A stretch of 64,000 nucleotides of DNA from Hemiscyllium ocellatum (GCF_020745735.1 NC_083408.1:8073131-8137130); one strand, 5' to 3'. Shown: positions 23,421 to 50,654, counted from the first letter of the stretch. Notes: generated by a model from the letters alone, not told the origin. Numbers and translations are program-made.

Positions 23421-23627
23421 TTTAACAATTTGAAGATATTGATACAGTGAATGGAATAGTGCCCTTTGTTACTTTCCCCTGAGTTGTGACATACATTGAA
23501 ATGTGTCCCTATAACACTTCAATGGGATAAGGTTGGACAAACAAACGCTATCTTCAGTCCGTTGCCATAGCGACTGACTGCTTCATCGCTGAAACATTGA
23601 ACTGAAATGAGAAAGTTCTGGGTGGAT

Positions 23628-24541
23628 TTATTGATGAGTGTATCTTATTAATTGATGAATTTGGCTAAAGGGATATTTCAGCACATTCACCAGTTGCAGT
23701 CTGAACTTTGTCTGGGTCACCACATAAATAATGCTGTTTGTGCAGCAACTGAGGAGCTGCAGCATGAAGCCCAGTTCGCGCACAGAATAATCTAGATACA
23801 CAGACCCATGCCCAATGTCCCACATCCGTTTCGATATAGAAAACACAGTTAACGTTGACCATAACAGGATGAAATTGGCCGAGATCGCAAACAGTAAAAT
23901 GATGGACTTTTTTCGGTTTCTCATTTCTGTGTCAGATTGAGCGTCCCCACTGATGTGAACTCGGAGTCTCCTGCGGACCCTGCTGGTCACTAAAATGTGT
24001 CTGACAGTGAAAACGTTGAGTAGAAAAATCAGGACAAATGGGAGAGTCGGAGTCAGAATGTGATGGAGGAACTCGATTGCGCCCCAGACACGGGAGGATC
24101 GAACAACGTACATGATATCACAAAAATTGGGGGTGTTCCCCAGCACATATCGACTTGTGAGCATAAAATACCAGAAAATATTCTTTAAACAGCTCAGCAC
24201 AGTCACGGTTCCCAGAACGACAGCCGCTGTTTTCTCATTGCAATATTTACTTTTCAGCTTCTGCCAACAAATGGCCACAAACCGATCAAAGGTGAAAGTG
24301 ACGGTGAACCAGACAGAGCAGTCAGTGGCTGCATAAAGCAGGACAGCGTGGATATTACACACGTGCATGGAGCGCCTCACAAAATAAAACTCTTCCCTAT
24401 AAACAATGGGAATGTGTCTCAGTATCAGGTCGAGGATAATGACCAGTAGATCCGCCACTGCCATGGCCCCCAGGTAACGTCTAACACATGGCGTCAATCC
24501 ACAATCTTTATAAAGCAGGACGTAGATGGTCACTACGTTAA
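23628..24541 (-). CDS. Probable G-protein coupled receptor 139-like (GPR139/GPR142-related class A orphan GPCR), coding exon 2
   Basis: Open frame with rhodopsin-family hallmarks: TM1 Asn (V-N-VVTI), TM2 YLGAMAVADLLVII, extracellular Cys (VCN), TM3 DCSVWFTVTFTFDRFVAIC (DRF), TM5 PFVLIFLLN, TM6 KSIILLFAISANFILLW, TM7 LQLLSCCTNSIIY, helix 8 TQTKFR. Acceptor TCCTTTTCCTTCCTCACAG|TTAAC, phase 1. Confidence 0.93.
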
Positions 24542-25209
24542 CTGTGAGGAAGGAAAAGGAACATTGTACGCTTCAACCTTGAGGTAAATTTACCAGTTTG
24601 ATTGGGGACCCAGTGAGATTTTCAAGTATGTCATTGTATTCAGAGATTTAATAAAATAATTGGAGTTCAAGTAACAAATGGGAATGTCTGAATTACTGAA
24701 AAAAGTGTCATAACACACTAGAAACCGTTCCTCTCCAAACACAGAGAAACACATCTATATGAACAGATGGTTTTCAGTACATTGCCACACACTCGATCAT
24801 TCGAGAGCAGACACAGGCCACTTCTTTCCATTTCCTAATATAGAGCCTGAAAAGTTACCCTCCTGAAGGATATTCTCCCAGTTCCTTGAAGACAAACAAT
24901 GTTTGGAAATTTCTAGATTTTTTACGTATTTGTGGTCGGTCCTGTTTCGTGAAAAAAATGTAAATTCAGGGAAAATGCATTCATCTCTTTAACTACCTGA
25001 GTGGACTTCGGAACAGTGGCACACCTTCAGCGAACGGGATCTATTTCTTCGGGATCTAATTGCTTATTCAAATCACTTACGCCCGGCCGTTCACAAGTAT
25101 TGTCTGGGATATAACTTTCTGGGGAATATCGTGAAATGAATGTTGGGTACAGAATGTTTCGGGGAATCTCAGCTATAGAATGTTGGGTACAAAATGTTTT
25201 GGGGAATCT

Positions 25210-26872
25210 TCCGTGGCTGTACCGGCATTATTCCCCACCTTTTCTTTCACTACATCGATGACTGGAAAGGCCCCACGTAATGTAAGGTGGTTGAACAGTT
25301 CATCAACTTCACAATCGCATTCACTCGACCTCAGGTTCGCCTGGATCATCGCAGACGCCTCCCTCCCCTCGTGGACTATCTCCGACGCCTCCTTCCCTTT
25401 CACAGACGAGTTTAGACACCACACTACCCTCCACTGATCATCCCCAAGATCTCCCAACCTTCCTGGACAATCTTTAACACCTCCTTCTCCTTTCAAGACC
25501 ATCTGGGACATCACCTTCCACTTCTCAGACCATTTTGGACATCTGATTCCCCTTCCCGGGCAATATTGGACACATCGCTTTCCTTGCTGGACCAACTCAG
25601 ACAGGTCACCGCCCTTTTTGGACAATTCTGGACACCTTCCTCCGCTTTCACGACCTTTCCAACTCCATCTCAATCTCCAGCCACTGATTAACCACGGGCA
25701 CCCAGAACAAGCCCACTGACTCCACAGCTATCTGGACTGCACCATCTCCCATTCTAACGCATCTGAAAATGCCATCTCTTTTATTTCCGAATTCCTCCAC
25801 CTCCAAAGCATTTGTTCCCAGGATTATCATTTCTGGCATAGAATATCCTAGATGAACTCCTTTATCAGGGATTGCAAGTTCTAACCGCACGTGGTTTATG
25901 ATTTCCTCCAGTGCATCCTCTCCACTTACCGCACCTCTGCCCTCGAATGCCACCCTTGCAAACGCAGCAAGGATAGACTCCCCTCATCCTCAAGTTCCAT
26001 TCCACTTATCACTGTATACTTCACATTATGTACTGCCAATTCAATCAACTACAAACAGACACAAAACGAGAGTATTCTGTTCCGTCACAACCCCTAACAG
26101 TGTTCCAGAGACACCATTCCATCTGCAACTCCCATGTCAATTGCACGCACCCACCAGAATTCACCCCACTCTTGGCACCTTCCACTCACACAGCAGAAGG
26201 TACAAAGTCTGCGCCAACACCTGACAGTCAGCTCCGTGCAATGCCCCAAACTATCCTTCCACGTCCAACAGAAATACACCTCTACCTCCACAAATGTAAT
26301 CTACTGTATCGATTACACCCAATGTGGTCTCCTGTACATCGGAAACACAGGATGCCAACATGCGGATCATTTCAGAGAACACATGTACCAACCAACGCCA
26401 CTGACGCTTGGCTGAACAGTTGTACGCCCCCTTCCAATCCACCGAGACCATTCAGGTCTTGATCCTCCAACATAACCACACTCTTACCAACCAACGCCTG
26501 GAGAAATAATGCCTCAACTTCCCCCTTGGGACCCTGCCATTACACTGGATTAATAGGGATGTCACTAGTTTCCTCACTTGCACTGCACATCCTGGACCCA
26601 TGACCAAGCCTCTAACTTGCAGCCACCCATCTTGTCCTGTCCATCGATTGCTCACTTATCAGGTCAGCCCTCCACTCCAACCAATCACTTATCCCCTTCC
26701 TCATCTACCTTCGCATTATCAGCTACCTTCCCCAGTTCCATATCCATCCATTTTTCTTTCAGCACCCCGCCCACAAGTTTCATTCCTGACAGAGGGCATA
26801 TGCTTGAAAGGTCGATTCTCCTGCTCCTCGGATGCTGCCGGAACTGCCTTTCTTCTCCAGCACCACACTCCT
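25210..26872 (+). mobile_element. Old, 5'-truncated Penelope-like element (RT C-terminal half, GIY-YIG, 3' end)
   Basis: GIIPHLFFHYIDD at about 25224-25262; STNVIYCIDYTQCGLLYIGNTG (GIY-YIG) in ORF 26134-26415; terminal region with degenerate hammerhead CCTGACAGAGGGCATATGCTTGAAAGGTCGATTCTCCTGCTCC. Homologous to 34912-36456. Confidence 0.85.
25341..25660 (+). repeat. Minisatellite (about 10-11 copies of 30-31 bp) amplified from Penelope RT coding sequence
   Basis: GGACCA-like anchors at 25343, 25373, 25404, 25435, 25465, 25496, 25527, 25558, 25589, 25620, 25651. The unit matches the single-copy TGGACCGTTTCAGACTTTTCCCTCCCCTTTC at 35161. Confidence 0.8.
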
Positions 26873-27489
26873 GGTCAGGAAACGTTGTGAGAGTTCCATA
26901 CACACACAATTAGATCTGATGGATGAGGTTACTTGAAAACTCAACACCATCCTTGTGTACATCTTGTCACATCAAAAGGACAGGCTCACCACGGTGGGGT
27001 CACTGGGGGATACGATCAAGGAAGGTGTTACCCTGCATCCCCAAAAATGCTTCCATAACCTGGGAAATCTCACGGTTACAGTTCAACGACTGTTAAGTAA
27101 ATCACGTGATCATGGACATTTCCTGCCCCCTACATCAATCCTTCGTATTAACTCAGATCCCCTCGATGTTGGAAATGAATCGAAGTCAGCTTTGAGAGTG
27201 ACAAGGACACAAACCGCTCTCTGGATGTGGGATTTCAAGGGTGTCTCCACTGACTCAGCAGTGAGAGCCTCTAATACACAGCAGCCAGACTGTGCGAAGT
27301 AAAGGAGGAACCTTCTCACCAAACTACTTGTCACAGCTAGATCTGTCTCTAATATTATCTGCAGGAGCAGCCAACACACAGTCCTGGCAGAGGGAAGTCT
27401 CATCCTCATATTTAAAGTACTGCCCACTATATTATATGTTACTCGCACCCGTGAATCAAGGCATACCTCTGAAGGACAGATCAAATGCA

Positions 27490-27605
27490 ATGTGGGCGTT
27501 CCATGAGGAACTGTGGGCCGTGTGAAGCTGCGGAATCAATGGCCTTCCTTCCATCATAAAGTCAGTATTCGGCTGTTCACTGATGATTCCAAAATGTTCA
27601 GCACC
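27490..27605 (+). mobile_element. Degenerate LINE reverse-transcriptase fragment (CR1/L2 group)
   Basis: GGCGTTCCATGAGGAACTGTG...ATCAATGGCCTTCCTTCCATCATAAAGTCAG...TTCACTGATGATTCC resembles GVPQG...INDLPSII.S...FADD. Confidence 0.55.
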
Positions 27606-28189
27606 AGTCACAACTAAATCTATACTGAAGAAGTTTATTCCACCTATCAATTTTAAACAGGTAAACAATGTGGCCTTTCAACCATTAAGGACTGTTACTC
27701 AGCAATTGGTGCAGATCTTTCAATCTCTCATGTCTGTTCCATAGGAAAGTGTTGGGCTCTTTCAGCCTTTCTAATCTGCAACGTAGGAATACGTGGAGGA
27801 TTGGTTCCTGAGGCTGGAGCAGGGGTAAATTAAGGAGGCATTTATCAATTTAACACAAAATGTCGAATGCAGTGAGGCAGTGAGCAACGTTGGAGCACAG
27901 CTACTTGCAACTTATACCAACGTTTTAGGTAAATGGAAAAATGTTTTCTCACTATGTTAGGCAGTAAACTAAGTAAGCAAGAGGTAGATAATCGCTAATA
28001 AGATAAGCAACAAACAAAATGCTGGCAGCAGCAATATAACGTGCGTATCCATGAAACTTTGATTTTTTTTTCAGAAATCTAAAAAGGCTGTATATTACAG
28101 AAATGGAGAGAGATTTTGATGTGGTTATTTGGCGCTGGGAGTGGTAAAGTGTTTTTTAGTCGCGTTTCAATGGCATGGCCTTTATCCGA

Positions 28190-28409
28190 GAGAGCTGAAA
28201 ATGTGTTGCTGGTTAAAGCACAGCAGGTCAGGCAGCATCCAAGGAACAGGAAATTCGATGTTTCGGGCCAGAGTTCTTCATCAGAAGGAAGGGCTCTGGC
28301 CCGAAACATCGAATTTCCTGTTCCTTGAATGCTGCCTGACCTGCTGTGCTTCAACCAGCAACACATTTTCAGCTCTGATCCTCAGCATCTGTAGACCTCA
28401 CTTTTTACT
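28190..28409. mobile_element. Penelope-derived hairpin mini-element with hammerhead motif and 16-bp target-site duplication
   Basis: About 90-bp near-perfect inverted arms (28191-28279 vs 28288-28376). Flanked by CTTTATCCGAGAGAGC (28180-28195) and CTTTATCCGCGAGAGC (28410-28425). Minus strand reads CTGATGA-AGAACTCTGGCCC-GAAACATC. Confidence 0.88.
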
Positions 28410-28689
28410 CTTTATCCGCGAGAGCATCATTTCCTTCCAGGTATCGACCCGAAGACGATCTGAATGAAGAGGCTGCGGCTGCTGCCGGGACAGTTAGTAT
28501 TCACCAATATGATGTACTGTGCATGGCTACACTGTCACATTAATGCAGTGAGAAAAAAGAGGGTCCAATCACAAGAATGAGAAAAAAACACATTGCTGGA
28601 TCAGCTGATATGGTAAACAAGATCACACTCTCAATCCAGCACAGAGAACCATTAACCCAGAGGAGATATCTTTCAGCTCAGAAACTGTG

Positions 28690-29411
28690 TGAATCAAGCT
28701 CTTCGGGATGCAAACCGGAAATCTGCCGGGTGTAGAAAACTGTGCAGACCACAGCAGTGCGTTAATCTGCAAACCCAGACAAGACAAATGTCCAACACGG
28801 GTACCTGTGCAGATCACAGCAGTGCATTCGTCAAGAACACGAACTCGGTATCTGTCTAGCAGCGGGAGCTATGCTTACCACAGCAATGTATTGATCTATA
28901 CATCCGAACTAGATAACTGTCCACCACCAGGAGCAATGCAGACCACAGCAATGCATTCAGCTACAAACGCGGACTAGATATCTTTCTAGCGCTGGGAGAT
29001 ATGGAGTCCACAGCAGTTCATTGATCCATAAAGCTGGATTAGGTGTCGGTCCAGCACCAGGACCTATGCAGAACACAACAGTGCATTGTTCTGTAAACAC
29101 GGACGAGATATCTATCCAACACCATAAGGTGTACAGACCTCAGTAGGGCTTGCATCTGTAAACCTGAACTCGATATCTGGCTCGCATGGGGAGCTATGCA
29201 GACCACAGCAGGGAATTTATCTGTAACTCGGACTTAGGTATCTGTCCAGCACCGGGATCTATTCAGACCACAGCAGTGCATTGACCTATAAAAGCTGACC
29301 AGATATCTGTTCAACAGTGGGAAGAGTGTAGACCACAGCAGTGCATTGAACTATAAACTCGGTTTAGATATCCGTCCAACACTGGGAGCTATGGAGGCCC
29401 CAGCAGTGCAA
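28690..29411 (+). repeat. 65-bp minisatellite, about 11 copies
   Basis: CAGACC-like anchors at 28745, 28810, 28874, 28939, 29004, 29069, 29134, 29199, 29264, 29329, 29394. Consensus CAGACCACAGCAGTGCATTGATCTATAAACCCGGACTAGATATCTGTCCAGCACCGGGAGCTATG. Confidence 0.92.
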
Positions 29412-29804
29412 CTATACCTAGGCCACTATGAATGAAGCACCCTGCAAGAGGTACATATGAATTTTATTTCATTTTCCTTAACTTTGAATGATTTGGATGC
29501 ATGCTCCAAATTACAGTGAGAATGGATTGAACAATGCTGAATGAAACGCAATGGCAGCAATGGGGTCAGCAACAGCCATGTTCATCTCCTTCTAATCATA
29601 ACTGAGGGATAGCAGTTATTCGAAGAAAAAAAAGCCATGAAATGTCTTAATGATTTTTGCAGAGTCATAATGTTCAAGCTGAAACTTCTCTTCTCTGCCC
29701 ACACTTTGTTTGTCTGATTTGCATTCTGTTTTCTGTTTGCAAACTTTTAACATTTTAATGCAGGAGCTAAGTCTCAGACCGAAGGCAAGGCCTCGAGATT
29801 TAAA

Positions 29805-30505
29805 GCACAGTGCAGGCTGGAGATGAGGCCGGGCGTGGTCTGTTGATTGGGCCCAATTTGGTCTGGAGACAGAGACCAGACATGTCTGGAAACTGGGTTT
29901 GGTCTGATCTGGACATTGGGTTCGGCATGACCTTGAGACTGGATCCAGCTTGGCTTGGAGACTGGGCCTGGTGCAGTATGAAGACTGAGCTGGCAACACA
30001 CTGGACACTAGGCCCAGTACGGTCTGGAGGTATTGCCTGGCATGCAGTGTAGTTTGGGCCTAGCACAGTCTGCAGACTGGGACTGGTGCAACCTGGAGAC
30101 TAGGTCCAGCACGGTGTGAAGATAGGGCCTAACATGGCCTGCAGATTGGGCCTAGCACGGTCCAGAGATTAAGCTCGACATGGACAGAAGGCTGAGTCTG
30201 TTGTGGCCTGACATCTGTGCCCAGCGCGGCCTGTCGACTCGGCCCGACATGTTCGGGAGACTGGGCCCAGTGCAGACAGAGGACGGGGCCGGTACAATCT
30301 GGATCTGGGTCTTGTGCAGTCGGGGGTTAGGCTCACCATGGTCACGAGACTGGGCCCGGAGCGACCTGGAGATTGGTCCCAGTACAGCCTGGAGATTGGA
30401 TCTGGCTTGGCTTGGAGACTGGCCCAGTGCAGTCTGGAGACTGGCCCTGTCCTGATCTGGAGACTTGGCCTGGTGTTGTCCAGAAATTCGGTGCTGCCCC
30501 AGACT
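29805..30505 (+). repeat. 23-bp GC-rich minisatellite, about 30 diverged copies
   Basis: TGGAGAC-like anchors at 30071, 30094, 30117, 30140. Consensus about GGTCTGGAGACTGGGCCCAGCGC. Confidence 0.88.
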
Positions 30506-30519
30506 GAGGTCGAAGGGCT

Positions 30520-30700
30520 GTATTTCGAGTTCGTTCTTTTTTTACCTGGTTATTCTTCTGCTGGACTTAAATCTGTGTTTCTTTCAATTTTGCACACAAT
30601 ACTATACTATCTGTACCAAGATTTCTTGCACCTGACCTGGCGCCATAAACAAAAAATATTGCAGTCTTTTCACTGCACACATTAGAATTCACGTGACAAT
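30520..30700 (+). mobile_element. Retroposon-like 3' tail adjoining the 23-bp array
   Basis: TTTTCACTGCACACATTAGAATTCACGTGACAAT resembles a LINE/SINE 3' stem-loop end. A related end lies in reverse at about 31575-31640 (TTTATTGTCACATGTATTC). Confidence 0.45.
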
Positions 30701-30919
30701 GAAGACTGTTTTTGATGTATTTTCCAAACAATGCTGCAGTGCCATGGTCGTCCAGGACAGGATGGAATTACGTCAATTTAAAAGCCAGATGGAATTTATC
30801 AACAAAGACAGTTTTCGGGAGCGAGGAGGGACATTTTGATTGCCCACTTCAATGGATTAACTCTCAAAACAACAGAATCACAAGGTTCAGAGAAGCAAAC
30901 ATAATGCAGTAATACATTA

Positions 30920-30939
30920 ACACACACACACACACACAC
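30920..30939. repeat. (AC)n microsatellite
   Basis: About 10 perfect AC units. Confidence 0.9.
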
Positions 30940-31019
30940 CAATAAACATACAGGCATTTGGCGACATTTGGCCCCTCAAGCCTGCATTTACAATCAATAA
31001 GACTATGACTGACGTGCTC

Positions 31020-31550
31020 TAGGCTGCAAGGTTAGTTGCTCTTGGGAGATAGGGCAGGGCAAGGGACTGGGCTGTTGCAGTGTGGTCACATTCGGACAAG
31101 TGACCGTAATTGTATTCGTTCTGGAAACGAATAATCCTGGTCCACAAATTAAACGTTATGAATTGGGGTTAGATTCATTGTGATGCTACTAGGCAGGAAC
31201 TTGAAAAACATGATTGGAAGAAGCTGGTAGCAAGTAAAAAAGACGTCAAGCAAATGGGAGTCTTTCAAAAGCGAGATAATCAGAGTTCAGGAAGAGCATG
31301 TCCCTACCAGTGTGAAAAGTAATGCTAGCACGGACAGAGGCAGCTTGAATCAAGTGAAACCCTTGAACATTCAGTGCGTAGGAGTACACATACCAGGGAA
31401 ATGATGAGGGGAAAACAGGGAGCATGAGATAGCTTTGGCAGATAAGGTTATGGAAAATGGAAAGATATTTTAGAAGTATGTTAAGGTCAAAAAATAAATT
31501 AGTTTCAATATATGACGCCTTAGAAATCAGTCATTTCTGTGTGGTTCCAC
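31020..31550 (+). mobile_element. Degenerate CR1 LINE ORF2 fragment (end of endonuclease and linker)
   Basis: TTCGGACAAGTGACCGTAAT (SDH-like motif), followed by W..L and KWESFKSEIIRVQ-like segments. Confidence 0.65.
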
Positions 31551-31814
31551 AATGGACGGATTCCATTTATTAGGTTTATTGTCACATGTATTCACAAGAA
31601 GACAAGTCTCCACATGTGATGCAATCTTATGTACCAAGTTCCACTCCCACTTCACTCCCCCGGCAACATACAGAATCTTGATAGAAAGCTGGAAAAATAC
31701 AAGAACACTGTTGCCAGATCAACAACATTTCATAAGCAACTGGCCAAAGTCGACAGAAGGACTCGGCCTCCCCAACTCCGCTTCCTTACAGCCTGTTCCT
31801 GCTCGATGGGTGAG

Positions 31815-32615
31815 ATCCCACTCTGAGAAAATAAACGCTTCTAGCTATTCACTTTGTTTATACCTCTCATGATTGCGAAGATCTCAATCAGGTCCCTCCA
31901 ACCTCAATCTTTCTAATGAGAATAATCTTAATCTACTGAACCTCTCTTCATAGCTAGCGCCCTACTCTCCAAGCAACGTCTGCACCCTTTTGAAAGCATC
32001 CACTTCCTTCAGGTGACCCGAACTATACGCAGTATTCCAAGTCCGGCCGAACCAAAATCCCACTCAACTGGAACAACATCTGTCAACTCTTATACTCAAT
32101 GCTCTATTCAGTGTAGGAAAATTTGCTGGATGCCTTCTTGACCACTTTGCCGACCTGCGTTGCCACCTTCAGAGAACAATAGACTTGAACACCCATGTCT
32201 CTATGTACGTTAATTTTCACCAGGACTTTTCCATTTACTGTATAGTTTTCTCCTGAACTGGATCTCCCAAAATGCATCAACTCGCATTTGCCCTGATTGG
32301 ACTCCATCTGTTTTTACTCTGCCCATCTGCTGTATTCTGCTGCATTCACTGATAATCCTCTTCACTACCTGCTACTCTACCAATCTAAGTGCTATCTGCA
32401 AATTTGCGTTATAGTGGTCCCACCACGGATCCCTGTGCAACACAACTGGTGATAGATTTCCATTTTGAGAAGCACATTTCTACTTCTACTCTGTTTCCTG
32501 TTGCCCAAAATGTTATTTATCCCAATTGCTTGAACATTCTAGATCCCATGCAATTTTCACTTTCTCCATCTGACAACCGTGGATAAATTTATCAAATGCC
32601 TTACTAATGTCCATC
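31815..32615 (-). mobile_element. CR1 LINE ORF2 RT fragment, deleted and decayed
   Basis: ORF 32104-32307 reads KCELMHFGRS...RDMGVQVYCSLKVATQVGKVVKKA. KFADST and GSVVGP remnants at 32390-32435. Confidence 0.85.
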
Positions 32616-34893: not shown

Positions 34894-34911
34894 TTCTCTT
34901 TCCAAGACAAC

Positions 34912-38423: not shown

Positions 38424-38619
38424 TTCTACTTCATGGTCAAATATATACCAAATATATTTTACCCACACAATGTACACATCACTTAATGTGATTGACCATC
38501 ATAAAAAGTATCAAATGGGAATTGCACAAGTTCCTTTTTTGCGCATTGGGTTTTCTAACCGAATCCAGAAATGGTGGCTGATGCATTATTTCCAAACCAT
38601 ACTCCTGTTCTTCCCCCAT

Positions 38620-39900
38620 TACTCAAGTGCCAAAAATCGTTATTTGTATTCAGTACCTTGATTTCCACAGCTTTATGTTGATGGGAATTCCCCAGGTTTA
38701 CCAGTCTCTGACTGACGCCTTTTGTTCTCATCTCAATGCAGTGCACCGTGCCTCTATTTCATATAGTGGCCCTTGTTTTAGAGGACCCAGCCAGGGGAAT
38801 TATCATCACTGATCCAACCTGTCTCACTCTGTCAGAGTTTCATACAGTTTAACCACATTTTCCTCAACCACATTTAAAATAGCCTCAATCATCGCAAATC
38901 GCGCAACCAGAGATCATTCTGGTCAAACTTCGCTTCTCTCCCTCAATGTCAGGTTTGTCATTTATTAGGTAAGGAACCCAAACCTGCATACAGTACTTCA
39001 CAATATTCGGGATTGGGTCTCATCAAGACACTGTAGAGCTACAGTAAGACACCCTTACTCCTGTATTCAAATCCCTTTAAAAAGACGGCCAACACACCAC
39101 ATTTATCTTCATAACTGTTTTCTGTTCCAGTCGTATTGATTTCAGTGATTGCTGTGCAAGGAGATCCAAATCATTTTCAATGCTTTAGCTACCCACTTGG
39201 TTGGTCTATTTGGATTGGTATGTGTGCCCATGCCATTTCTAGTATTGGATTCTTGCTTCAGAATTCACCAAGTTGTGTGGACCTCTGAGGTCTGCGCAGA
39301 AGAATTCAAAAAAGAAGCATTAGTCCCTTTGCACATCAACATGTTAGGATTTTATTTTATTGTTCACACCAACCCACACGACGTCAGATCTACCACAGTT
39401 GCCCTCCGCCTGCCATGTATTTGCCAATTCACTTCCACTTCGTTCCTACGAAGATTTCCATGCGAGACCCCAACATCTTTTGGGTGGAAAACAATCCTCA
39501 AATCTGTTCTGAATCACGAACACCTCACTTTAAAAGTGTGTACACCTCTTCTAGATCATTTTGCTAAAAGGACAAGCTGCTGTCTACCGCTCTCTCCATG
39601 CCCCTCACAATCTTATCCATCTGAAGCTCCTTCCCCTCAGCCTTCTCTGCTCCAAAGAAAATATCCTGAGTTTATCCAACCTGTCTATATCGCTGATATG
39701 CTCAATCCAAGGGAGCATCCTGTTCAATCTCCACTACATCTCTCCAGTGCAATAGCACCTTTTCTGTAATTAGACGATTGGCGCTGCACACAGTATTCCA
39801 TCTGTGGCCTATTCAAAATCCTGTCTCGCTTTAAAGTCTATGGTTCATTGAATAGAGGCAATCTCGACAGTCCACTCTGCCTTCTCAACTAGCCCATTAC
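38620..39900 (-). mobile_element. Two or more decayed CR1 LINE 3' fragments
   Basis: Reverse-complement CR1 ORF2 3' motifs (e.g. CTGCACACAGTATTCCATCTGTGGCCT = RPQMEYCVQ; QRLVNLGNS in ORF 38555-38746). Confidence 0.65.
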
Positions 39901-39914
39901 ACTGTCGAGTCACA

Positions 39915-40752
39915 TTCATGGATATTTTTATGAATGACTTGGAAGAGGGCATCGACAGGTGGATCAGGAAATTTGCAGATGATAGTAAGATTGTGGAGTT
40001 GTGGATAGTGAGGAGGGCTGTTGTCAGCTGCAAAGGGACTTAGATATGATGCAGAGCTGGGCTGACGAGTTGGCTCTTAGTAAGGGAGAAGAGCAGAGGG
40101 ATCTTGGAGTCTATGTTCATAGCTCTTTGAAAGTTCCCACTCAGATTGATAGAGCTTGTAAGAAGGCCTATGAAGTATTAGCGTTCATTAGCAGAGGGAT
40201 TGAATTCAAGAGTCGAGAGGTGATGTTGTAGCTGTACAGGACCTTGGTAAGGCCACATTTGGAGTACTGTGTGCAGTTCCGGTCGCCTCAATTAGGTAAC
40301 ATGTGGAAGCTTTTGAGAGGGTGCAGACGAGATTTAGCAGGATGTTGCCTGGAATTGAGAATAGGTCGGACGAGGATAGATTGAGAGTGCTAGGCCTTTT
40401 CTCATTGGAACGGCGAAGGATGAAGGGTGAATTGATAGAGGTTTATAAGATAATCATGGGAATAGATAGAATAGACAGTCAGAGACTTTTTCCCCCGCGT
40501 ACAAAGCGTGTTACAAGGGGACATAAAGTTAAGGTGATCGGTGGAAGGTATAGAGGGGATGTCAGTGGTAGGGGGCATGGAATGCGCTGCCTGTGGGAGT
40601 GGCAGAGTCAAAATCATTGGTGACCTTTAAGCGGAAACCTGATAGGTACATGGATAGGTGCCTAATCTAGGAGAAATGTTCGGCACACCATCGTGGATCG
40701 AAGGGCCTGTTCTGTGCTGTATTGATCTATGTTCTATGTTCTGTGTTCTATT
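39915..40752 (+). mobile_element. CR1/HER1-type LINE, 3' portion with terminal repeat tail
   Basis: KFADDSKI, QRDLGVYVHSSLKV, RPHLEYCVQF, LGLFSLERRRMKGELIEVYKI; 3' end CGAAGGGCCTGTTCTGTGCTGTA followed by (TATGTTC)n. Confidence 0.92.
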
Positions 40753-42300
40753 CAGGGATGTGTAAAATAACAATCTTTGAGTTTCCTGGTGTGCTGCCAT
40801 TCATTGAGTACTCCCTTGTCTGGTTCCTTCTACCAAGTACATGACATCATATATATGACCGTTACGTTCCATCAGCTAATGATCTGCCTATCTCTCTATT
40901 CCATCTCTATCGTCCTGTAACATTAAAAAAAACCTTCTCCTCACTGGCAAAGATGCACTTTCTTGTCATACCCCCACACGTCCTTCCACACTCACATTGA
41001 GTCATAAAGTCATAGAGATGCACATCACGGAAACAGACCCGTCGGCCCAACTCGTCCATGCCGACCAGATATCCCAACTCAGTCTCGTCCGACCTGCTAG
41101 CACCTTTCCCAAAAACCTCCAAACCATTTAGATTCATATACACATCCAGATGCCTTTTAATTGTTGCAATTGATAGAATCTATAAAAATGTAGAGTACGG
41201 AAATAGACCCTTTGGTCCAACTTATCCCTTCCGACCAAATACCACAATCCAATCTACCTACATTAATTATGAATGCCACAATACACCAGGCCACCCTATT
41301 ATCCTGTCACAGAAACAGGCTTCCACCACAGCTCTTTGTCGATTGCCACTCAAGCAATTTTGAAAGTAAATCGATAAGATACATTTGATACCATGAAATT
41401 TTACTTTCAGTTTCCCATGTCGGGCTTTGTCAAAAGCCTGCTGAGATACCATACAAATGAACTCCGTGATGAATTTCAATACAATTCATTAGGCATGGCT
41501 TCACTCTAAGAAAGCCATGCTGACTATCCCTTAACAAACATTGACTGTCGAAATGGAGATCAATTTTATCTTTCCTCATTTCCTCCAATAGTTACCTTAA
41601 CAAAGAACTGACACTTAAAGATGTTCCATCGTTTTTTGTGTAAAGTGCAACCGCATCGCACCTTTTCCATCTTTCCTGTGGTTATATTCTGCACAAATGT
41701 TTTGTCAGGGCCTGCACAAATGTGTTGTCTCCAACAACAGCCTGGGATAACAGGTATTAAGCTATTTGCCCAATTTTATACCAGCTAAAACCATCAATCC
41801 CTAATTCATTCTTAATCAATCGGCTGAAGAGTTTCCCACTCAATCTTCTCGAATTCTGCACCTGCCTTCTCCATTTCCCAAGTAAAACAGGTGTGAATCT
41901 CGCATATAACAATCTACCAGTGTTCTCGCGCTTCACATACTGATTGTCCCCTTGGTTTCTAATTTGATTGATCGCTGATAATATTATTCTAATTGATATC
42001 CTTTTGGAATATTCTGAGATTCTCCCTGTTCTCATTGCCCCATGTCCATGTGTTAGTTAGTCCCCTCTGTGTGAATTTTCTCAGTTTTGTTTCGGATAAT
42101 TTTCATTCGTTGAAATTCCAGGGAACACAAAACAATTTCTCTCATCAGACAATCTGGCAATATGAGGGATTAATCTGGAGAATGTACATTGAATATATGT
42201 GGTCAGTATATTCTTCATTAGGTCAGATCACCAAAACTGTCCACTATACTCCAAGTACCATCTTACTAACATTGGTGATTGTGGTGAAGGACAGATTGAC
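40753..42300 (-). mobile_element. Nested minus-strand CR1 fragments, including 3' ends at about 41000-41170 and 41175-41270
   Basis: GAGTCATAAAGTCATAGAGATG...GAAACAGACCCGTCGGCCCAAC is a reversed CR1 tail. ORF 41267-41479 reads QQAFDKARHGKL...QRAVVEACF. Confidence 0.75.
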
Positions 42301-42610
42301 TTTTCGAAGAAGTAGATTATTGCAGTACAACCCATGCTGGAAATCTGACAACATCCACTGAGAGAGAGAGCAAGCTAACGCTTCTAATCTGGATGATTTT
42401 CGCCATCTACATTCCGATTCCCTTTAAAGAGGAAACACCTGCCTTTTATCTTCCTATTTGCACATGTTCCTCCCAATACATATTGCATTTTTTCCAAATA
42501 CCTTACTGTCTGAATTCTTAAGAAAAAGAGCTACTGTTTGTCCAACTGTTTTCCATTCATTTGTTCTCCATTGTTTATGCCGACTAGAGATATCTTCAAG
42601 CAATACGTTT

Positions 42611-42990
42611 GTTACGAGTTTTGGGAACATTTGTAACTCAGGTTGAGCTTTAGAATGTGGATTTGCTCGTTGAGTCGAAAGGCATAATCCAAAGAAAGAC
42701 ATGCACGAAAATTCCCAGAAGCATGACATTCCAACCAGAACTCTACTCACAAACACATCGAGTTAGACCTCATATGCCACCCCTGAGACAAGGAACAGGA
42801 TGTGACTTCACCACAGGACATAACATCAACAAAGGAAATGACGTCACCAAACCAAGATACCCGAACATGTAAATAGAAAGCAGTACGTTTCAACATTTCT
42901 TCACGTGAGGTCTACTGAAGATGTTACCTGGTATGGTAATTAAACCTTTGGAAATGTATCTTTCAGCTCAGCGAGCAAACCTATATCCGA
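42611..42990 (+). mobile_element. Short Penelope fragment (GIY-YIG C-terminus and 3' repeat) with inverted terminal piece
   Basis: RHARKFPEA*HSNQNSTHKHIELDLI resembles 59100-59180. Degenerate hammerhead CTGAAGATGTTACCTGGTATGGTAATTAAAC (about 42914-42945). 42611-42670 is a reversed 3' terminus related to 61525-61592. Confidence 0.72.
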
Positions 42991-44704
42991 TAAGGTTGTA
43001 AATTATAACATCCGTTTCATAAATGCAGAATCATTCTATTGAAGTATCTTTTATTACTTTCTTGATGAAAAATATCATATTCGTTATAATAGATTTCAAC
43101 GTTTTCCCTGATTTGGATGACGAGTTAGCTGGTCTGTTGTTCTCCATTCTCCCTCTTCTTCCTAGTTTGCATCGTTGGAATACATTTTTAAAGCTCCAAA
43201 TTGATTATGGACAAATACAATGCTCCTCAGTTCAATTAATATTTGCATTGCTGCTTTCTCTGAAATCTCAGTTTGAAGTATATCTGGTCTGTCAGAATAA
43301 TCAATCCTCAACTCGGTTCATGTTTTCAAACACTAGCTCGTCACTAATATGAATAGCTTTATTCTTTAGTAACACCAATCCCTTCGTCACTTTACATTTC
43401 TGGGGGATGTTCTGTACCTTGCTCCATGAAGGCAGTTAGAATGTAACTGATTAGTTCCATTTCATTTCTCTGCTCTCAACAATAATTTAGGCTTTCCACA
43501 CATTCATTGATCTACATTTGACCTTGCTTTCATTTTTCTTTCAAATATTAATAAAATGTCTTCCTCAGTCTTTATGTTTCTTGTTAGTTTGCATTCTTGA
43601 TCTCACTTTAATTTCCTTACCAGTTTCTTAGCCCTCCTTTGGTCCAATGAATCCACAATATTTTGTATTTTCTCTGAGCCATATTCCTTGATCTAATACA
43701 ATTTCTATCTTCTTTTAACCATGGTGGAGCCAACTTAACCTTTTGCTGTGTGCACAATCGAGGATGTACGTATAATCTACATCTTCAAATATTGCCTGTC
43801 TTCCTTTAAATCATGTCCACGTACTTTCCAAATTCATTGAAATCACCTTGCTCTTCATACTTTCAATGCTTCCATGACTCTGATATATACTAAACATGAA
43901 GGAAAATACTGATTTATTAATGGCATCATGTAAAAATCAATAAATTAAGATCAGTACTCACAAAAGCTCATTTATCACAAGGTTTTCAATGCCATCTTCA
44001 GATCAGACAACACCAGTTCAAAAAGTGCCTGATCTGTAGCTCGTTGCTCACGTATGGTTAAAGGAAATCAGCTCATACACACTCGTGAAATAATTTTCCC
44101 AGCATTAATCTTCATTGGTGTCATCACAGTTTGCATGCAATTTCAATTTCTCCATCATTACTGCCGTACTCACAATCTTTACTTTCTAATTTCCTGTTTT
44201 GTAACATCCCCAACATTTGAAGAAGCTTTGTGTTTGAAATTTCACTCCCAACAATGTTTGCTTCTCCTTGTTGTTTCTCAACTCCCCCTTAACAGGTTCT
44301 CTGGAATCTGAGCAAGTGGGCTCGGAGGAGATTAAGGCTAGAATCAGCTGAGATGCTTGGCGAGGCATATCTCAAAGTTAATTTTATCTCGCCCCAACTT
44401 ACCCGTTTTTCTCCAGTATCGTTAAAACATTTTCAAATGATCTCCCATTGTGCTCACAGATAGAGAAGGACAATGATATTTCAACAATGAAGTGCATTCC
44501 CCCAGACAGCTGAGACTTTTGTAACCAGGGTTCGAATCTTAAAGCAGCTGGTAATGTGTTGCTGTTGCTATACAGGACCTTTGTGAAATCACATCTGGAC
44601 TAATGCGTTTAAATATAATCTCTGCCCGTGAAGACAGGATTTTCGAACTAACTTGGTGTTAGTTCCTTCAACTGATTTATGCAACGAAGGTGTTACTCAT
44701 GGTT

Positions 44705-45042
44705 ACTCTACAGTGTGGAAGTAGGCCATTTGACCCATGAACATCACACTGATCAGTCAAAGATCATCAAAAGCTTACCCAAACCCGATCCAATCGCTGT
44801 AACCCTGAATTTTTCACGATTACTGCATTAACCTGAACATCACCGTACATTATGGCTAATTTAGCATAGCTAATCAAATTATCCTGCAAATTTTGAGACT
44901 TTTGGCAGAAACTGGATACCCGATAGACATCCATGCCCACTAGAGGAGAATGTGCAAATTCCACACAGACAGTCACTTGAGGCGAGAATTGAACCCTAAT
45001 CGCTGGTACTGTGAGGCAGCAGTGCTTACCATTGAGCTAACC
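44705..45042 (-). mobile_element. HE1-type SINE
   Basis: Reverse complement shows the tRNA head (GCTCAATGGTAAGCACTGCTGCCTCACAG...GGGTTCAATTC), TGTCTGTGTGGAATTTGCACATTCTCC core and CR1-like tail. Confidence 0.88.
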
Positions 45043-46184
45043 AGTGTAAGTACGGAAGCTCCCCTTCCGAATGAAGCAGCAGCACCACCTTGTTTCTGCC
45101 CACGGACCTTTCACATAGGAGGTGAAATGTGATAACTACAATACTGCAGAAACACAGTGTGACCGCTGACTCTCTGAACATCCTGTGCTGTCCCTAATCA
45201 TAGATCACTTCGCAAGAAACAGATCACATTTTGACGTGTTCAATTCAGACAGAAGTCACTCAGACCAAAATTCAGGATAACACCTATCAGCGCAACTGGC
45301 AGTCGTGGAATTCAAATCCACACATCAATTCATACTGAAGCTTAGATCCAGCACCGTTGCAGGCTCAGCCACCTGCCACACTGAACTAAACACATGAGCA
45401 GGATTTGAATCCAGCTCTCGAGGACATCACTGCATCACTAGCTGCGAAGGGAAATGATAATACCAGAGCGGCATTATCTTAACTGAATTCAACATTCTCT
45501 GAAAGGAGGCTAACTCAGGCAACAGGATTGTAGGCAATGTTTCCTTTGAACACGAGACTCAAGTTCAACCAATCACGTTTTGCCTCCTTCCGCAGCACCA
45601 GATTGGATCAATAACCCAATGGAAGAGCTACACGCCATTTCAGAGAAATTTAAACAAGGAATGGTTAACGTGAGGTTTAGGAACTTGTCGGGTTTGAGCC
45701 GCAGATCGATATGCATACAAAGCAGGCATTTTACCCCCAACTAAACAAGACCGTCACATTAACTTATGGGGGAAGGATGAGCAGGTTGATTCAATGCATA
45801 TTAAAGTTTACAGGAATGGCAGACGACCTTGTTATGAGGCTCAATTTGTTTTCTTTGCCCCTTTGCAGCAGACGAGGAAGAGGCTGTTTATTTTCTGAAT
45901 CCTGATACACAGATTCAGGAAGAGGCCATTCAACCCCTACACACTACAACAAAGGACTCACAAAAGACCATGGCGTATTCTGTTGCACAATATCTTCATG
46001 AGGCCAGTCAACCTTCACAATGCTGCAATGTCAGAAGTGGAAGAGGCCAAAAATGACTGGAAATTGTCACACTAGGATAATACCATTCAGCCCATTGAGT
46101 CTGTTGCTCAAGAACGGAAGGGTACAAAACCGTTTGAATGCTTTATTAGATCATAAGGTGGTAATTCCGTTTCGTCTCTGTTCT

Positions 46185-46885
46185 ATGGGAACAGCAGAAC
46201 ATGGAATACAGAACATTACAGCGCAGTACAGGTCGTTCAGCTCTTGATGTTCCGCCGACCTGTTGAACCAATCTGGAGCCTACCTTTCCTACACTGTTAC
46301 ATTTTCGTGCATATATTTGACGATTTTGGTGTCCTGAAAGTTGCCGAATCTGCTATTGTTGCTTGCCGTTTATTCCACGCCCCTACTAACCTCTGAGTAA
46401 AGAAACTACCTCTGACATCTGCCCTATACCTGTCACACTTCAAAGTAAGGTTATGTTTCCTCGTGCTAACCACCACCATCCGAGAAAAATGGCATTCAAT
46501 ATCCAACCTATGCAACACTCTGGTTACCTTATAGGTGTCAATTAAGTCACCTCTCAATCTTTTTCTCTCCAACGAAAACATCCTCAAGTTCTTCAGACTT
46601 TTCCCTTAAGTTCTTCCCTACACTCCAGGCAAAATCCTCGAAAATCTCCGCTGAACACTTTCCAAGTATTCATCCTTCATCTCATGCATTGACCAGAATT
46701 GTACACAAAATTGCAAGTGCGGCCACACTGGAGTTTTGTACAGCTGCAGCATGACTTTATTGCTCCGAATTTCAATCCCTCAACGACCAAAAGCTAACTC
46801 TACGTTTGCCTGCTTAACGACCTTACCAACCTGCGTGCCAGCTCTCAGCGGTCTCCATACATGGACAGAGAGATCTCTCTGCATG
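46185..46885 (-). mobile_element. CR1 LINE 3' portion
   Basis: ORF 46297-46587 reads MFSLERKRLRGDLIDTYKV...FFTQRLVGAWN. Reversed tail at 46190-46260. Confidence 0.9.
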
Positions 46886-48718
46886 TTCCAGATGAGGGTT
46901 CGTGGCGATAGAAAAGAAATACTTACTTGGAAAGAGCATTCACAAACCAATAATAGCCAGGATGTGGAGGTACCGGTAATGAACAGCAGTGGTCAAGATG
47001 AAAAATCACACAAACCAGATTACATTCAAGCACACTTATTTGAAAACACCAGCTTTCAGAGCACAGCTATTTTTCCAAGTGTTAAAGAGAGGAAGGAAGA
47101 ACGTTAACACAGAACTTATAAAGAAACCTTCAGAGGATCGTACAAATTATGTGCATGAATTGTCCGCAAGTAAGCTGGCTTTTAAATCTTGAATCAGTTA
47201 GAATGGAGTGGCAGATTTTGAGTGATTAGTATGGAAATCCGACAGAGTCTTACAAGCCACTCTGGGAGATAAATGAAAAGGAGATGAACCTCTGGTCAGA
47301 CAATGTATTTTAAGCGTGAGACCTTGCTTGGAGTCTCTATGCGTCTTTGCCTCGAGCCGAAAACCAAGGCCACGAAAAGATATGTAAGGAGATTGACATG
47401 TAAGATAGAAACAGATAATGAAACAACTGGGAACGTAGTGTGGAAACTTGGGCGAAAAGAAAAGGCAGGGAGTGGGAAGAATTTAGGAGTTAGACTTGAT
47501 GGGTCCAACCACAAGAATGAAAACATAAAAAAAAACATTGCTATATGCATTGAAATCGTTTGATTATACAATTCTGGTCCTCCCCCACAGAATCAGCCCA
47601 GACACCATAAACTGGGACACGATAACTGCCCATCATGAAGAGCTTTGCAGACTATGCTGGTATATTGTCCAGTGAACTGGACTACCTGCCCTGCATGGAA
47701 AGTACTGCTAAGCTTTGCCAGTACATTGTTGCTTCACTTGCCTTGGATTTCTGCTGAGCATGCGAAAATATGTATCTCATACTACAAGTGACAGTATATG
47801 GGACTCCCACAAATTTATGGCTCTGTAACTCCATCCATCAGTTCAAGGCATAAGATTTTATGTCTGCGTATGTGTGTGGATCTGGGAAAGTGATAGATGT
47901 GAATATAATTGTCTGACAGAGAATATACATGGAAAAAAATCAGGTTACGTGCGAACAATGGCAGGAATTGGGAGAATGGATACAGAAAGATAGAGGAATA
48001 GACGATGGACAGATGTGAGATGTGCTTGAGTATGTTATAATAAAGGCAACGCCAGGCACAATATCTATATAAGTCAATCCGCTCAGGAATAATACATGGC
48101 TGGTATTTTATGTGAGTATGGATTCCAGCCATGGGCTGTCGACTCAGAATTCCTTCTGCAAGTTTGAGACTGGGAAACAGATTATTTCCCAGTCATTAAG
48201 GCTGTACTGCGTAGCTCAAGTATTAAATAACAGATGAGATGAAACAGAGAAATTTGTTCAGAAGATGCCAGCTGAAAGTCAAAATGGTCGAGGTATGATG
48301 TCAGGAATCAGCTCATTGCCAAAGGGATCACCAAACTTGTGATTCGTCTGTTTCAGATTCAGATATTGACCAGGGATGGGATTGAGTGAGACGCAGTAAA
48401 TTGAGTTTATAATCTGAAAATATGATAGTGACCTGTTAACACTGAGATAATAAGGGTAGTGCAACCATGAAACATGGTTTCCAGCTGAAAATGCGTAGGT
48501 CAACATAAAGATCTACGAGGGATTCTGCCAGAAGGAGAAAGTGGGAAAGTGAATAAAGAAGTTCCCTGATGCAGTTAGTAGTGGTCTCTGGATTTAATAT
48601 CTGGATTTAGGAACTCAGCAGGACCAATAACAGCTGTAAGAATTGTAGGGTCAATGGAAAGAACAGTATTACAGTGAAACACGGTTTATAGAATCAATGG
48701 CTAAGAAGTAGGACTTAC

Positions 48719-48857
48719 CAGGGACACCAGCAATAGCCAGGAATGGATAGTAAAAATATTGAATAATGTTAATTGCATATATGATCCGAAGTGACAATGA
48801 CCATCGATCATAAAATGTCGAAAAAAGCCAAATATCCCATTGTAATTTCCTGTCCAT
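48719..48857 (-). CDS. GPR139-like GPCR, coding exon 1 (N-terminus and first half of TM1)
   Basis: ATG at 48857; MDRKLQWDIWLFSTFYDRWSLSLRIIYAINIIQYFYYPFLAIAGVP ends at canonical donor CCTG|GTAAGT. The 139 nt give phase 1, matching exon 2 and producing YYPFLAIAGVP-VN-VVTI. Spliced CDS is 1053 nt = 350 aa + stop. Confidence 0.85.
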
Positions 48858-50650: not shown

Positions 50651-50654
50651 CATG

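What the first reader, a model, noticed from the sequence alone, without database searches (positions are those of the whole stretch)
23628..48857. Intact, divergent GPR139-like receptor split by a 24-kb intron: candidate member of a shark-expanded orphan GPCR family
Seen: two exons 24 kb apart have canonical, phase-matched splice sites and join inside TM1 into an uninterrupted 350-aa 7TM protein. Everything around it is decayed, which suggests selection. Motifs are non-canonical (DRF for DRY, NSIIY for NPxxY, no CWxP proline in TM6). Knowledge: mammalian GPR139/GPR142 sense aromatic amino acids (Trp/Phe). My recollection, not verified here, is that shark annotations hold many 'probable GPR139' paralogues. 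Inference: this is not the 1:1 orthologue but one of a lineage-specific receptor repertoire of unknown ligand, possibly chemosensory or immune, in a ZNF/satellite-rich compartment.
Basis: partly seen in the sequence, partly recalled or inferred. Interest (0 to 1): 0.7.

Follow-up and report, generated by a model that had tools for sequence, protein, structure and literature searches.

The report
Intact shark-expanded orphan receptor gene
This is a real, intact two-exon gene for a cell-surface receptor, one member of a family that sharks have multiplied into thousands of copies whose outward-facing parts change fast; no paper I could find describes the family, and what it senses is unknown.

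Summary
On the minus strand, exon 1 (48857-48719) and exon 2 (24541-23628) join across a 24,177-base GT-AG intron in phase 1. The product is a 350-residue rhodopsin-type receptor.

An annotated zebra shark relative has the same splice sites. So does a single-copy Xenopus gene of the nearest outside group.

The gene has been kept by selection. Against its nearest copies the coding part is 12-13% diverged with no indels. The adjoining intron is 23-27% diverged with 6-7 indels. Only 4 of 114 family-conserved residues differ.

It is not GPR139: a family profile scores 43 bits against human GPR139. It belongs to a family with thousands of candidate copies in this genome.

Variation sits on the extracellular face: one side of the N-terminal helix that exon 1 encodes, and the three outer loops. 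In young copies pN/pS is about 3 at those sites and 0.15 in the core.

The nearest outside relative is a single-copy amphibian and sturgeon gene.

No RNA read came from this gene itself. Reads from relatives pile up in the sense direction and stop at the predicted poly(A) site. Ligand and tissue stay unknown.

The scan has noted this family before on other DNA of this genome (65 notes).

The parts
48858..49300 (-). Conserved 5' flank (putative promoter and 5'UTR). It includes a TATAAT-like element and a well-conserved block at about 48957-49003. An in-frame TGA lies 54 nt before the ATG.
   Evidence: the whole 480 nt aligns at 73-78% with dozens of paralogues; 26 distinct copies, including two zebra shark genes, align from about -450 to +450, and many columns are >=90% conserved. 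No transcription start was mapped; the promoter role is inferred.
48719..48857 (-). Exon 1 coding part: 46 codons plus 1 base. It encodes the N-terminal tail, a helix with one hypervariable face, and the outer half of TM1.
   Evidence: The family HMM scores E 6e-11. All 31 copies examined end in G|GTAAGT.
24542..48718 (-). Intron of 24,177 nt, GT...AG, phase 1.
   Evidence: Annotated zebra shark relatives have introns of 10.2 and about 23.3 kb at the same codon. The Xenopus sister gene has a 15-kb intron at the same codon and phase.
24542..25240 (-). Last ~700 nt of the intron, still alignable with paralogues. Used as the neutral control.
   Evidence: 23-27% diverged, with 6-7 indels per ~690 nt.
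23628..24541 (-). Exon 2 coding part: the rest of TM1 through TM7, helix 8, the tail and the TAA stop.
23395..23627 (-). Putative 3'UTR, with AATAAA at 23420-23415 and ATTAAA at 23407-23402.
   Evidence: paralogue homology ends about 300 nt after the stop; sense-oriented poly(A) RNA reads from relatives begin in the 23402-23452 bin and are absent below it.

Best explanation
The locus is a functional two-exon gene for a class A (rhodopsin-type) G-protein-coupled receptor. It belongs to a clade that cartilaginous fishes have amplified to thousands of copies.

Shown:
- The reading frame, splice sites and family-conserved core have been kept by purifying selection.
- The core retains the parts that transmit activation to a G protein: D2.50, DRF, the TM3-ECL2 cysteine pair, W6.48, and N7.49 and Y7.53.
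- Family variation is concentrated on the extracellular face. This is one side of the N-terminal helix encoded by exon 1, the top of TM1, and ECL1, ECL2 and ECL3. Young copies there show an excess of amino-acid changes.

Inferred:
- Each paralogue binds a different extracellular ligand at this outer surface and signals through a G protein, so the family is a ligand-recognition repertoire.
- The variable surface is loops and N-terminus rather than the deep TM3-TM6 pocket. The predicted fold has an ECL2 hairpin like peptide receptors. The ligands are therefore more likely peptides or other larger or polar molecules than small hydrophobic odorants.
- A chemosensory role is the likeliest use (about 0.4 by my estimate). 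An immune or other peptide-sensing role comes next.
For: Structure of the gene. The same donor, acceptor and phase occur in an NCBI-annotated zebra shark gene and in Xenopus.

Selection on this gene:
- Against the nearest paralogues the CDS is 12-13% diverged with 0 indels in 906 nt. The adjacent intron is 23-27% diverged with 6-7 indels, and the 3'UTR is 22-25% diverged.
- The simulated chance of keeping the frame open under substitutions alone at 10-15% divergence is 0.7-3.5%.
- On the gene's own branch I counted about 24 synonymous and 40 non-synonymous changes, a ratio of about 0.45.
- Only 4 of 114 columns that are >=95% conserved in the family deviate, and three of these are conservative changes.

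Family size: 12,344, 3,451 and 2,669 first-look candidates in the own genome. All 130 scored copies were open.

Diversification:
- 38 of the 40 most variable columns are extracellular.
- The variable N-terminal positions recur every 3.8-4 residues (permutation p 0.001).
- In 29 young copies pN/pS is 3.1 at sites that are hypervariable in other species and 0.15 at conserved sites. Amino-acid changes avoid conserved columns: 11% of them vary against 77% of the least conserved.

Fold: the AF2 model of a 79%-identical relative has pLDDT 90, a confident N-terminal helix and an ECL2 hairpin. The nearest solved folds are the mu-opioid receptor, GPR139, and nociceptin, neurotensin and chemokine receptors.

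RNA: poly(A) single-cell reads from relatives lie in the sense orientation and stop at the predicted poly(A) site.
Against: - No RNA read at >=99% identity to this gene was found, and no read crosses the 48719-24541 junction. Expression and splicing of this particular copy are therefore unproven.
- The gene sits on a long terminal branch and lacks the family's conserved ECL2 tryptophan (W185N, in the PWFC motif next to the disulfide cysteine).
- The two halves of the locus have different histories. The exon 1 half has copies at 93% and 88-90% identity elsewhere. Exon 2 has no relative closer than 86%.
- Ligand, G-protein coupling and tissue are all inferred.
- The 130-of-130 intact count is biased by score ranking.
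- Synonymous divergence is also raised at the hypervariable sites (0.08 against 0.03). Gene conversion may therefore contribute to that signal.
Confidence: 0.72

Rival explanations
1. The gene is real, but the family is not chemosensory. It would be an immune or internal peptide-sensing repertoire, expressed for example in leukocytes or epithelia and reading peptides or proteins from pathogens or from the animal itself.
For: Variation lies in the loops and N-terminus, while the outer half of TM3 is almost invariant. That is unlike odorant receptors. The nearest folds are peptide, chemokine and chemerin receptors. Another note of this scan (s1-193324) reports copies interleaved with T-cell-receptor V genes, but says nothing shows the two functions are linked. 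I did not check it.
Against: No tissue data exist either way. Thousands of copies with birth-and-death dynamics are typical of chemoreceptors. Sharks are reported to have very small canonical olfactory repertoires (PMC11979771), which leaves room for another family.
Confidence: 0.3
2. This copy is a silent relic. It would be an old exon 2 that happens to lie downstream of a more recently duplicated exon 1 block. It would not be transcribed or spliced as predicted, and would be intact only for now.
For: The two halves have different histories. The exon 1 block has copies at 93% identity (with a frameshifted exon 1) and at 88-90%. No block homologous to the surroundings of exon 2 exists elsewhere. 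The gene has a long branch and carries W185N. No gene-specific RNA read was found.
Against: The CDS has half the divergence of its own flanks and no indels. The own-branch dN/dS is about 0.45, and 110 of 114 conserved columns are kept. Both splice sites are perfect. Five of the six amino-acid differences between exon 1 and its 87%-identical copy fall at the family's hypervariable positions. The RNA sample was about 2% of one run, from an unknown tissue and possibly another species.
Confidence: 0.13
3. The copy number reflects passive amplification, by segmental duplication or by hitch-hiking with repeats, of a sequence that is open only because the copies are young.
For: The 29 nearest copies are 96.7% alike in the CDS and 96.3% alike in the flanking intron. 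Their overall dN/dS is 0.88.
Against: The same copies have pN/pS of 0.15 at conserved sites and 3.1 at hypervariable sites, and their changes avoid conserved columns. The window gene is old (dS about 0.23) and still open.
Confidence: 0.04
4. It is the shark orthologue of GPR139 or GPR142.
For: Automatic names in databases. Human GPR139 is the best solved-structure hit of the family profile.
Against: The profile score is only 42.6 bits at about 20% identity, and the single sequence has no PDB hit below 1e-5. There are thousands of paralogues. Two other vertebrate groups score much closer, at 139-148 bits. They form separate clades in the tree.
Confidence: 0.01

Closest known systems
Human GPR139 (PDB 7VUG; aromatic amino acid and peptide-activated orphan receptor)
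   Same: Class A fold. It is the best solved match of the family profile (E 4e-10) and rank 2 by fold. It shares the rare loss of Pro7.50: NFFLY in GPR139 against NSIIY here. Three residues needed for GPR139 activation have counterparts: F109 aligns with Y116, H187 with H206 (invariant in the 20-sequence family alignment), and W241 with W274 (PMC5430874).
   Different: About 20% identity. DRF replaces DRY, and there is no Pro6.50. The polar pocket residues N271 and R244 have no counterpart: they align with Phe and Leu. GPR139 is single-copy and brain-expressed, whereas this gene has thousands of paralogues with a hypervariable outer face.
Single-copy amphibian and sturgeon gene annotated 'probable GPR139' (for example Xenopus tropicalis P0400, Pleurodeles P0235)
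   Same: It is the sister group of the chondrichthyan family in the tree (support 95/87). It has the same two-exon structure, with a phase-1 intron in the codon after G-x-P of TM1 and a long intron. It also has FTFDR and NxxIY motifs.
   Different: 32-33% identity. It is single-copy and well conserved, at 66-74% identity across amphibians. It keeps DRY and W-x-P in TM6 and has a short N-terminus.
Vertebrate-wide orphan group (coelacanth P0242, catshark P0279, teleosts, amphibians, reptiles), probably among the 'GPR210' orphans listed beside GPR139/GPR142 in PMC6504862
   Same: It is the next clade out in the tree and also has an NxxxY motif without proline.
   Different: It has ERF instead of DRF and no W6.48. 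It is one gene per species, including sharks, at 66% identity between coelacanth and catshark. I could not map the paper's Ensembl identifiers to these proteins.
Vertebrate chemoreceptor multigene families (OR, TAAR, V1R/ORA, V2R)
   Same: Very large copy number, clusters and dispersed copies, birth-and-death with partial and broken copies, and excess amino-acid change at presumed ligand-contact sites.
   Different: A different clade of class A. The gene has two exons with a long intron. Variation is in the N-terminal helix and loops rather than in the TM3-TM6 pocket. Expression in sensory neurons has not been shown.
Peptide and protein-binding class A receptors (opioid, apelin, AT2, neurotensin, chemokine)
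   Same: Top fold matches with TM-score around 0.65-0.7, and a predicted ECL2 beta-hairpin.
   Different: 14-21% identity. This is a generic fold resemblance, not evidence of shared ligands.

Membership tests
Rhodopsin-like (class A) GPCR | Seven-transmembrane domain matching Pfam 7tm_1 | tested here: met
   E 2.8e-22, 79.9 bits against a cut-off of 30.5, covering profile positions 2-260 of 260. The model of a 79%-identical relative has seven helices plus helix 8.
Rhodopsin-like (class A) GPCR | Conserved microswitches: N1.50, D2.50, E/DRY, the C3.25-ECL2 cysteine pair, CWxP and NPxxY | tested here: inconclusive
   Present: N48, D77, D132-R133 (as DRF), C108 and C187, W274, N315 and Y319. Absent: Pro6.50 (Thr) and Pro7.50 (Ser). 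The same pattern holds across the family.
GPR139 orthologue | One-to-one orthology with high identity to vertebrate GPR139 | tested here: not met
   The profile scores 42.6 bits against human GPR139 at about 20% identity. There are thousands of paralogues. Closer single-copy groups exist.
GPR139 orthologue | Agonist pocket residues F109(3x33), H187(5x43), W241(6x48), N271(7x38) and R244(6x51), from PMC5430874 | tested here: not met
   From the alignment, Y116, H206 and W274 correspond to the first three. The positions of N271 and R244 hold Phe and Leu.
Wider GPR139/GPR142-related clade | GPR139 is the nearest characterised receptor, and the NxxxY motif lacks proline | tested here: met
   (best by profile, rank 2 by fold). 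(NFFLY in GPR139; N-x-x-x-Y in all four related groups). The margin over other class A receptors is small (42.6 against 35 bits). No tree with true GPR139 or GPR142 could be built.
Chondrichthyan-expanded 'probable GPR139' family | High identity to annotated members and retention of family-conserved columns | tested here: met
   75-82% identity to whale shark, zebra shark and bamboo shark proteins, and 65-70% to horn shark, catshark and sevengill. 110 of 114 conserved columns are kept. The gene lies inside the orectolobiform clade with 100/99 support.
Chondrichthyan-expanded 'probable GPR139' family | Two-exon structure with a phase-1 intron after G-V-P of TM1, and a conserved 5' flank | tested here: met
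   31 of 31 donors read G|GTAAGT, and 30 of 30 exon 2 copies are preceded by CACAG. Searches show the conserved 5' flank.
Chemosensory receptor repertoire | Large, fast-turning-over family with diversifying selection at ligand-contact sites | tested here: met
Chemosensory receptor repertoire | Expression in sensory cells, one or a few receptors per cell | not testable with these tools
   One search gave only family-level poly(A) reads from a coded single-cell run of unknown tissue. None came from this gene.

The most novel reading that the evidence does not exclude
The family would be the main, so far unrecognised, chemosensory receptor repertoire of cartilaginous fishes. It would explain how animals with a few dozen canonical olfactory receptors sense their chemical world. 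It would use an unusual recognition surface built from a hypervariable face of the N-terminal helix plus the outer loops. It would have arisen from a single ancestral jawed-vertebrate gene that survives as one copy in amphibians and sturgeon. This gene would be one working unit of that repertoire.
Probability: 0.25. Interest if true: 0.9.

Novelty: new variant of a known kind. Interest (0 to 1): 0.62.

Why it matters
Sharks are reported to use essentially one small olfactory receptor family, with about 35 V2R genes in catshark (PMC11979771). A class A receptor family with thousands of open copies and positive selection on its outer face is an obvious candidate for a missing sensory or recognition repertoire. 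No paper in the searchable library describes it; databases only label its members 'probable GPR139'.

This gene adds three testable points:
- An old, isolated member is still under constraint, so the family is not merely a recent burst.
- The exon 1-encoded N-terminal helix carries a large part of the variability.
- A single-copy amphibian (Xenopus) relative with the same gene structure offers a tractable entry point for finding the ancestral ligand class.

Tried and rejected
- RNA support for the junction. Two run searches found no RNA holder. Read laying on 23300-24800 with two single-cell RNA runs, one DNA run and one run of unknown type gave 253 reads in one RNA run, none >=99% alike, and none in the other. 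The contigs of unknown type cross the acceptor unspliced and may be DNA. This is neither support nor refutation for this gene.
- Fetching the exon 2 regions of the two loci that carry close copies of exon 1. Indirect searches found no close exon 2 or flank copy.
- A first structure model from a shallow alignment was unusable (pLDDT 47). I could not check whether the N-terminal helix touches ECL2.
- A tree including true GPR139 and GPR142. No tool returned their sequences in usable form, so their place rests on bit scores only.
- Other family copies, alternative exons or zinc-finger genes in the window: none found.
- Pfam scan of ten long ORFs in the window: only one reverse-transcriptase fragment.
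- Rfam and tRNA scans: nothing.
- Literature on GPR139 together with shark or cartilaginous fish: nothing relevant.
- A transposon origin of the copies was rejected on the site pattern of substitutions.
Full report
**What is in the sequence**

All features lie on the minus strand.
- An ATG at 48857 opens a 139-nt exon that ends CCTG|GTAAGT at 48719.
- 24,177 nt further on, a pyrimidine tract and CACAG| precede an exon that runs from 24541 to a TAA at 23630-23628.
- Joining the exons in phase 1 gives 350 codons without a stop.
- An in-frame TGA lies 54 nt upstream of the ATG with no ATG between, so 48857 is the start.
- Exon 2 alone matches Pfam 7tm_1 at E 2.8e-22. The match begins at profile position 2, the Asn of TM1, so the outer half of TM1 has to come from another exon.
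- Exon 1 provides it. Its end (IIQYFYYPFLAIAGVP) aligns residue for residue with the N-termini of annotated shark proteins.
- A family HMM run over all six frames finds only these two exons in the 64-kb window. My motif scan finds no zinc-finger motif.

The 'ZNF-rich, decayed' description of the surroundings is not.

**The gene model matches annotated relatives**

- The NCBI model of a zebra shark relative (P0006, 348 aa) has a 139-nt first exon ending CCCTG|GTAAGT. Its acceptor reads CCTCACAG|TTAACGTAGTG and its intron is 10.2 kb.
- A second zebra shark gene has an intron of about 23.3 kb holding a reverse-transcriptase ORF. A whale shark model spans 91 kb.
- In this genome, all 31 exon 1 copies I fetched end G|GTAAGT, and all 30 exon 2 copies are preceded by CACAG.
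- Paralogue homology around exon 2 runs from about 700 nt inside the intron to about 300 nt past the stop. AATAAA (23420) and ATTAAA (23407) lie there.

**Selection on this gene**

- The nearest exon 2 in the genome is only 82% identical in protein and 86% in DNA. The gene is therefore an old, isolated lineage with dS of about 0.23 to its nearest kin.
- Against four of those kin, the coding sequence is 12-13% diverged with no indel in 906 nt. The adjoining 690 nt of intron is 23-27% diverged with 6-7 indels. The 3'UTR is 22-25% diverged.
- Random substitution alone at 10-15% divergence leaves the frame open in 0.7-3.5% of simulations.
- I assigned changes to the gene's own branch using a zebra shark or whale shark gene plus an own-genome paralogue. 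This gives about 24 synonymous and 40 non-synonymous changes, a ratio of about 0.45. That is within the range of the other branches (0.23-0.56).
- Of 114 columns that are >=95% conserved in 74 annotated family members, the window protein deviates at four: S63T, T316S, A320V and W185N. Annotated members have a median of 2 and a maximum of 7. W185N removes the conserved tryptophan of the ECL2 motif PWFC and is the one worrying change.

**The family**

- The exon 2 protein finds 1,740 database proteins. The top hits are all named 'probable GPR139' and come from whale, zebra, bamboo, horn, cat, sevengill and white sharks.
- In the window's own 3.98-Gb genome, the first look gives 12,344 candidates with the protein, 3,451 with exon 2 DNA and 2,669 with exon 1 DNA. 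All 130 scored protein matches are open. Because only the best-scoring candidates are scored, that 130-of-130 count is biased toward intact copies.
- The 29 nearest copies form a young subfamily. They are 96.7% alike in the CDS and 96.3% in the flanking intron, with an overall dN/dS of 0.88. That looks neutral until the sites are partitioned.
- At codons that are hypervariable in other shark species, pN/pS among these copies is 3.1. At conserved codons it is 0.15.
- Only 11% of the most conserved columns vary. Of the 30 least conserved, 77% vary, with about three extra residue types each.
- Synonymous divergence is also higher at the hypervariable codons (0.08 against 0.03), so gene conversion may add to the signal.

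**Where the variation lies**

- Over 74 full-length family members, 38 of the 40 most variable columns are extracellular. They fall in the N-terminal tail, the top of TM1, ECL1, ECL2, ECL3 and the tops of TM5-7.
- TM2, TM3 (including its outer, pocket-lining half), TM4 and the inner halves of TM6 and TM7 are almost invariant.
- In the exon 1 product the variable positions come in pairs: 7-8, 10-11, 14-15, 17-19, 22-23, 26-27, 30-31 and 34-35. The period is 3.8-4 residues (permutation p 0.001). This is one face of a helix.
- An AlphaFold model of the zebra shark relative, built with a 68-sequence alignment, is confident (pLDDT 90, pTM 0.88). It shows a helix at residues 3-14, a long helix from residue 21 running into TM1, and a hairpin in ECL2.
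- Fold searches return peptide and protein receptors: mu-opioid, nociceptin, neurotensin, apelin, AT2 and chemokine receptors. GPR139 ranks 2 among solved structures. Scores are nearly equal throughout.
- Five of the six amino-acid differences between this exon 1 and its 87%-identical copy fall at hypervariable positions.

**Relationship to GPR139 and to other vertebrates**

- The single sequence has no PDB hit below 1e-5. A 20-sequence family profile hits human GPR139 best, at 4e-10 and 42.6 bits. The PAF receptor scores 35 bits and GPR15 34 bits.
- The family shares with GPR139 the rare absence of proline in NPxxY. It also has counterparts of F109, H187 and W241, three of the four residues needed for GPR139 activation. 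It has none for N271 or R244 (PMC5430874).
- An exhaustive profile search finds 2,020 cluster representatives. Outside cartilaginous fishes, two groups score far above GPR139.
- The first group is a gene found once per species in frogs, salamanders, caecilians and sturgeon (148 bits).
- The second is a gene found from sharks to reptiles (139 bits). It is probably among the 'GPR210' orphans listed beside GPR139/GPR142 in PMC6504862.
- In a maximum-likelihood tree the chondrichthyan family is sister to the amphibian and sturgeon gene (support 95/87), and the shark-to-reptile group branches next to that pair, its position unresolved.
- The Xenopus gene has the same structure. Exon 1 ends ...GMP with CCAG|GTAAGC, there is a 15-kb intron, and the acceptor is TTTAG|CA, in phase 1 at the same codon.
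The expansion does, but the clade has a single-copy bony-vertebrate sister.
- True GPR139 and GPR142 could not be put in the tree.

**History of the locus**

- Exon 1 and its surroundings have younger copies. One lies 2.7 Mb away on the same contig: 93% identical over window 47904-50673, with exon 1 frameshifted. Another is on a different contig: 88-90% identical over 47172-50647 with an intact exon 1, and 83-86% identical again over intron stretches 33708-34140 and 36358-39147.
- Nothing comparable exists for exon 2 or for the 2 kb on either side of it.
- The exon 1 half has therefore been duplicated without exon 2, or the copies lost it. This is typical birth-and-death debris. It also means the present pairing need not be the original one.

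**Expression**

- No run on record as RNA holds the gene.
- I laid about 2% of a poly(A) single-cell run from a coded, closely related or identical species at >=80% likeness. This gave 253 reads, none >=99% alike and 16 at 95-99%.
- The reads pile up over 23402-23707 in the orientation expected for minus-strand mRNA. They begin exactly at the predicted poly(A) site.
- Other reads in the opposite orientation run unspliced across the acceptor.
- This shows that relatives are transcribed and polyadenylated at the homologous site. It says nothing firm about this copy. The tissue is unknown.

**Conclusion**

The finding is a genuine, selectively maintained member of a very large receptor family that is expanded in cartilaginous fishes and described in no paper I could find. 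Its mechanism is inferred: ligand capture by a diversified N-terminal helix and loops, relayed through a conserved class A core. Ligand, coupling and tissue are open. The scan has already reported this family at other places in this genome.

Noticed in passing
window 3205-22900 (+ strand): A long CT/CA-rich low-complexity region with 31-34-bp and 93-100-bp tandem units (for example 6555-6820 and 7511-7687). It produces dozens of overlapping ORFs of 110-333 aa on the + strand. Five of the longest have no Pfam match, so they look like compositional artefacts, not genes.
   Followed up: partly
window 28743-29410: A tandem array of a 65-bp unit, about 10 copies at 67% match, inside the receptor gene's intron.
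   Followed up: no
window 59640-60296 (-): A reverse-transcriptase (RVT_1) fragment, E 3e-7, about 11 kb upstream of exon 1. It is a relic of a retroelement.
   Followed up: no
window 25620-26875: An interspersed repeat inside the intron, with about 10,000 first-look candidates genome-wide at 68-73% identity.
   Followed up: no
window 22835-22901: A 66-nt element found at 88-91% identity at dozens of places across many contigs. It is not a tRNA and matches no Rfam family. It is probably the conserved core of an interspersed repeat.
   Followed up: partly
L062 (own genome, contig C8, 10,857,445-10,858,346): A family exon 2 on the opposite strand with a frameshift near residue 261, 74% identical to the window's exon 2. 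It lies about 27 kb from the frameshifted copy of the window's exon 1, so two broken family pieces sit side by side.
   Followed up: partly
window 48858-48899 (-), just upstream of the ATG: The 14 codons before the start read DQNLSTFDCKAPR. This is homologous to the MDQNLRTIDWNV... N-terminal extension annotated in many paralogues. Here the upstream ATG is AGT, so this copy starts at the second methionine, as several annotated relatives do.
   Followed up: partly
L002-L030 (own genome): The intron upstream of exon 2 in the young subfamily contains internally repeated segments: coverage 2-3 times the number of loci. The homology among these dispersed copies spans the whole 3.9 kb fetched, which suggests large duplication units.
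   Followed up: no
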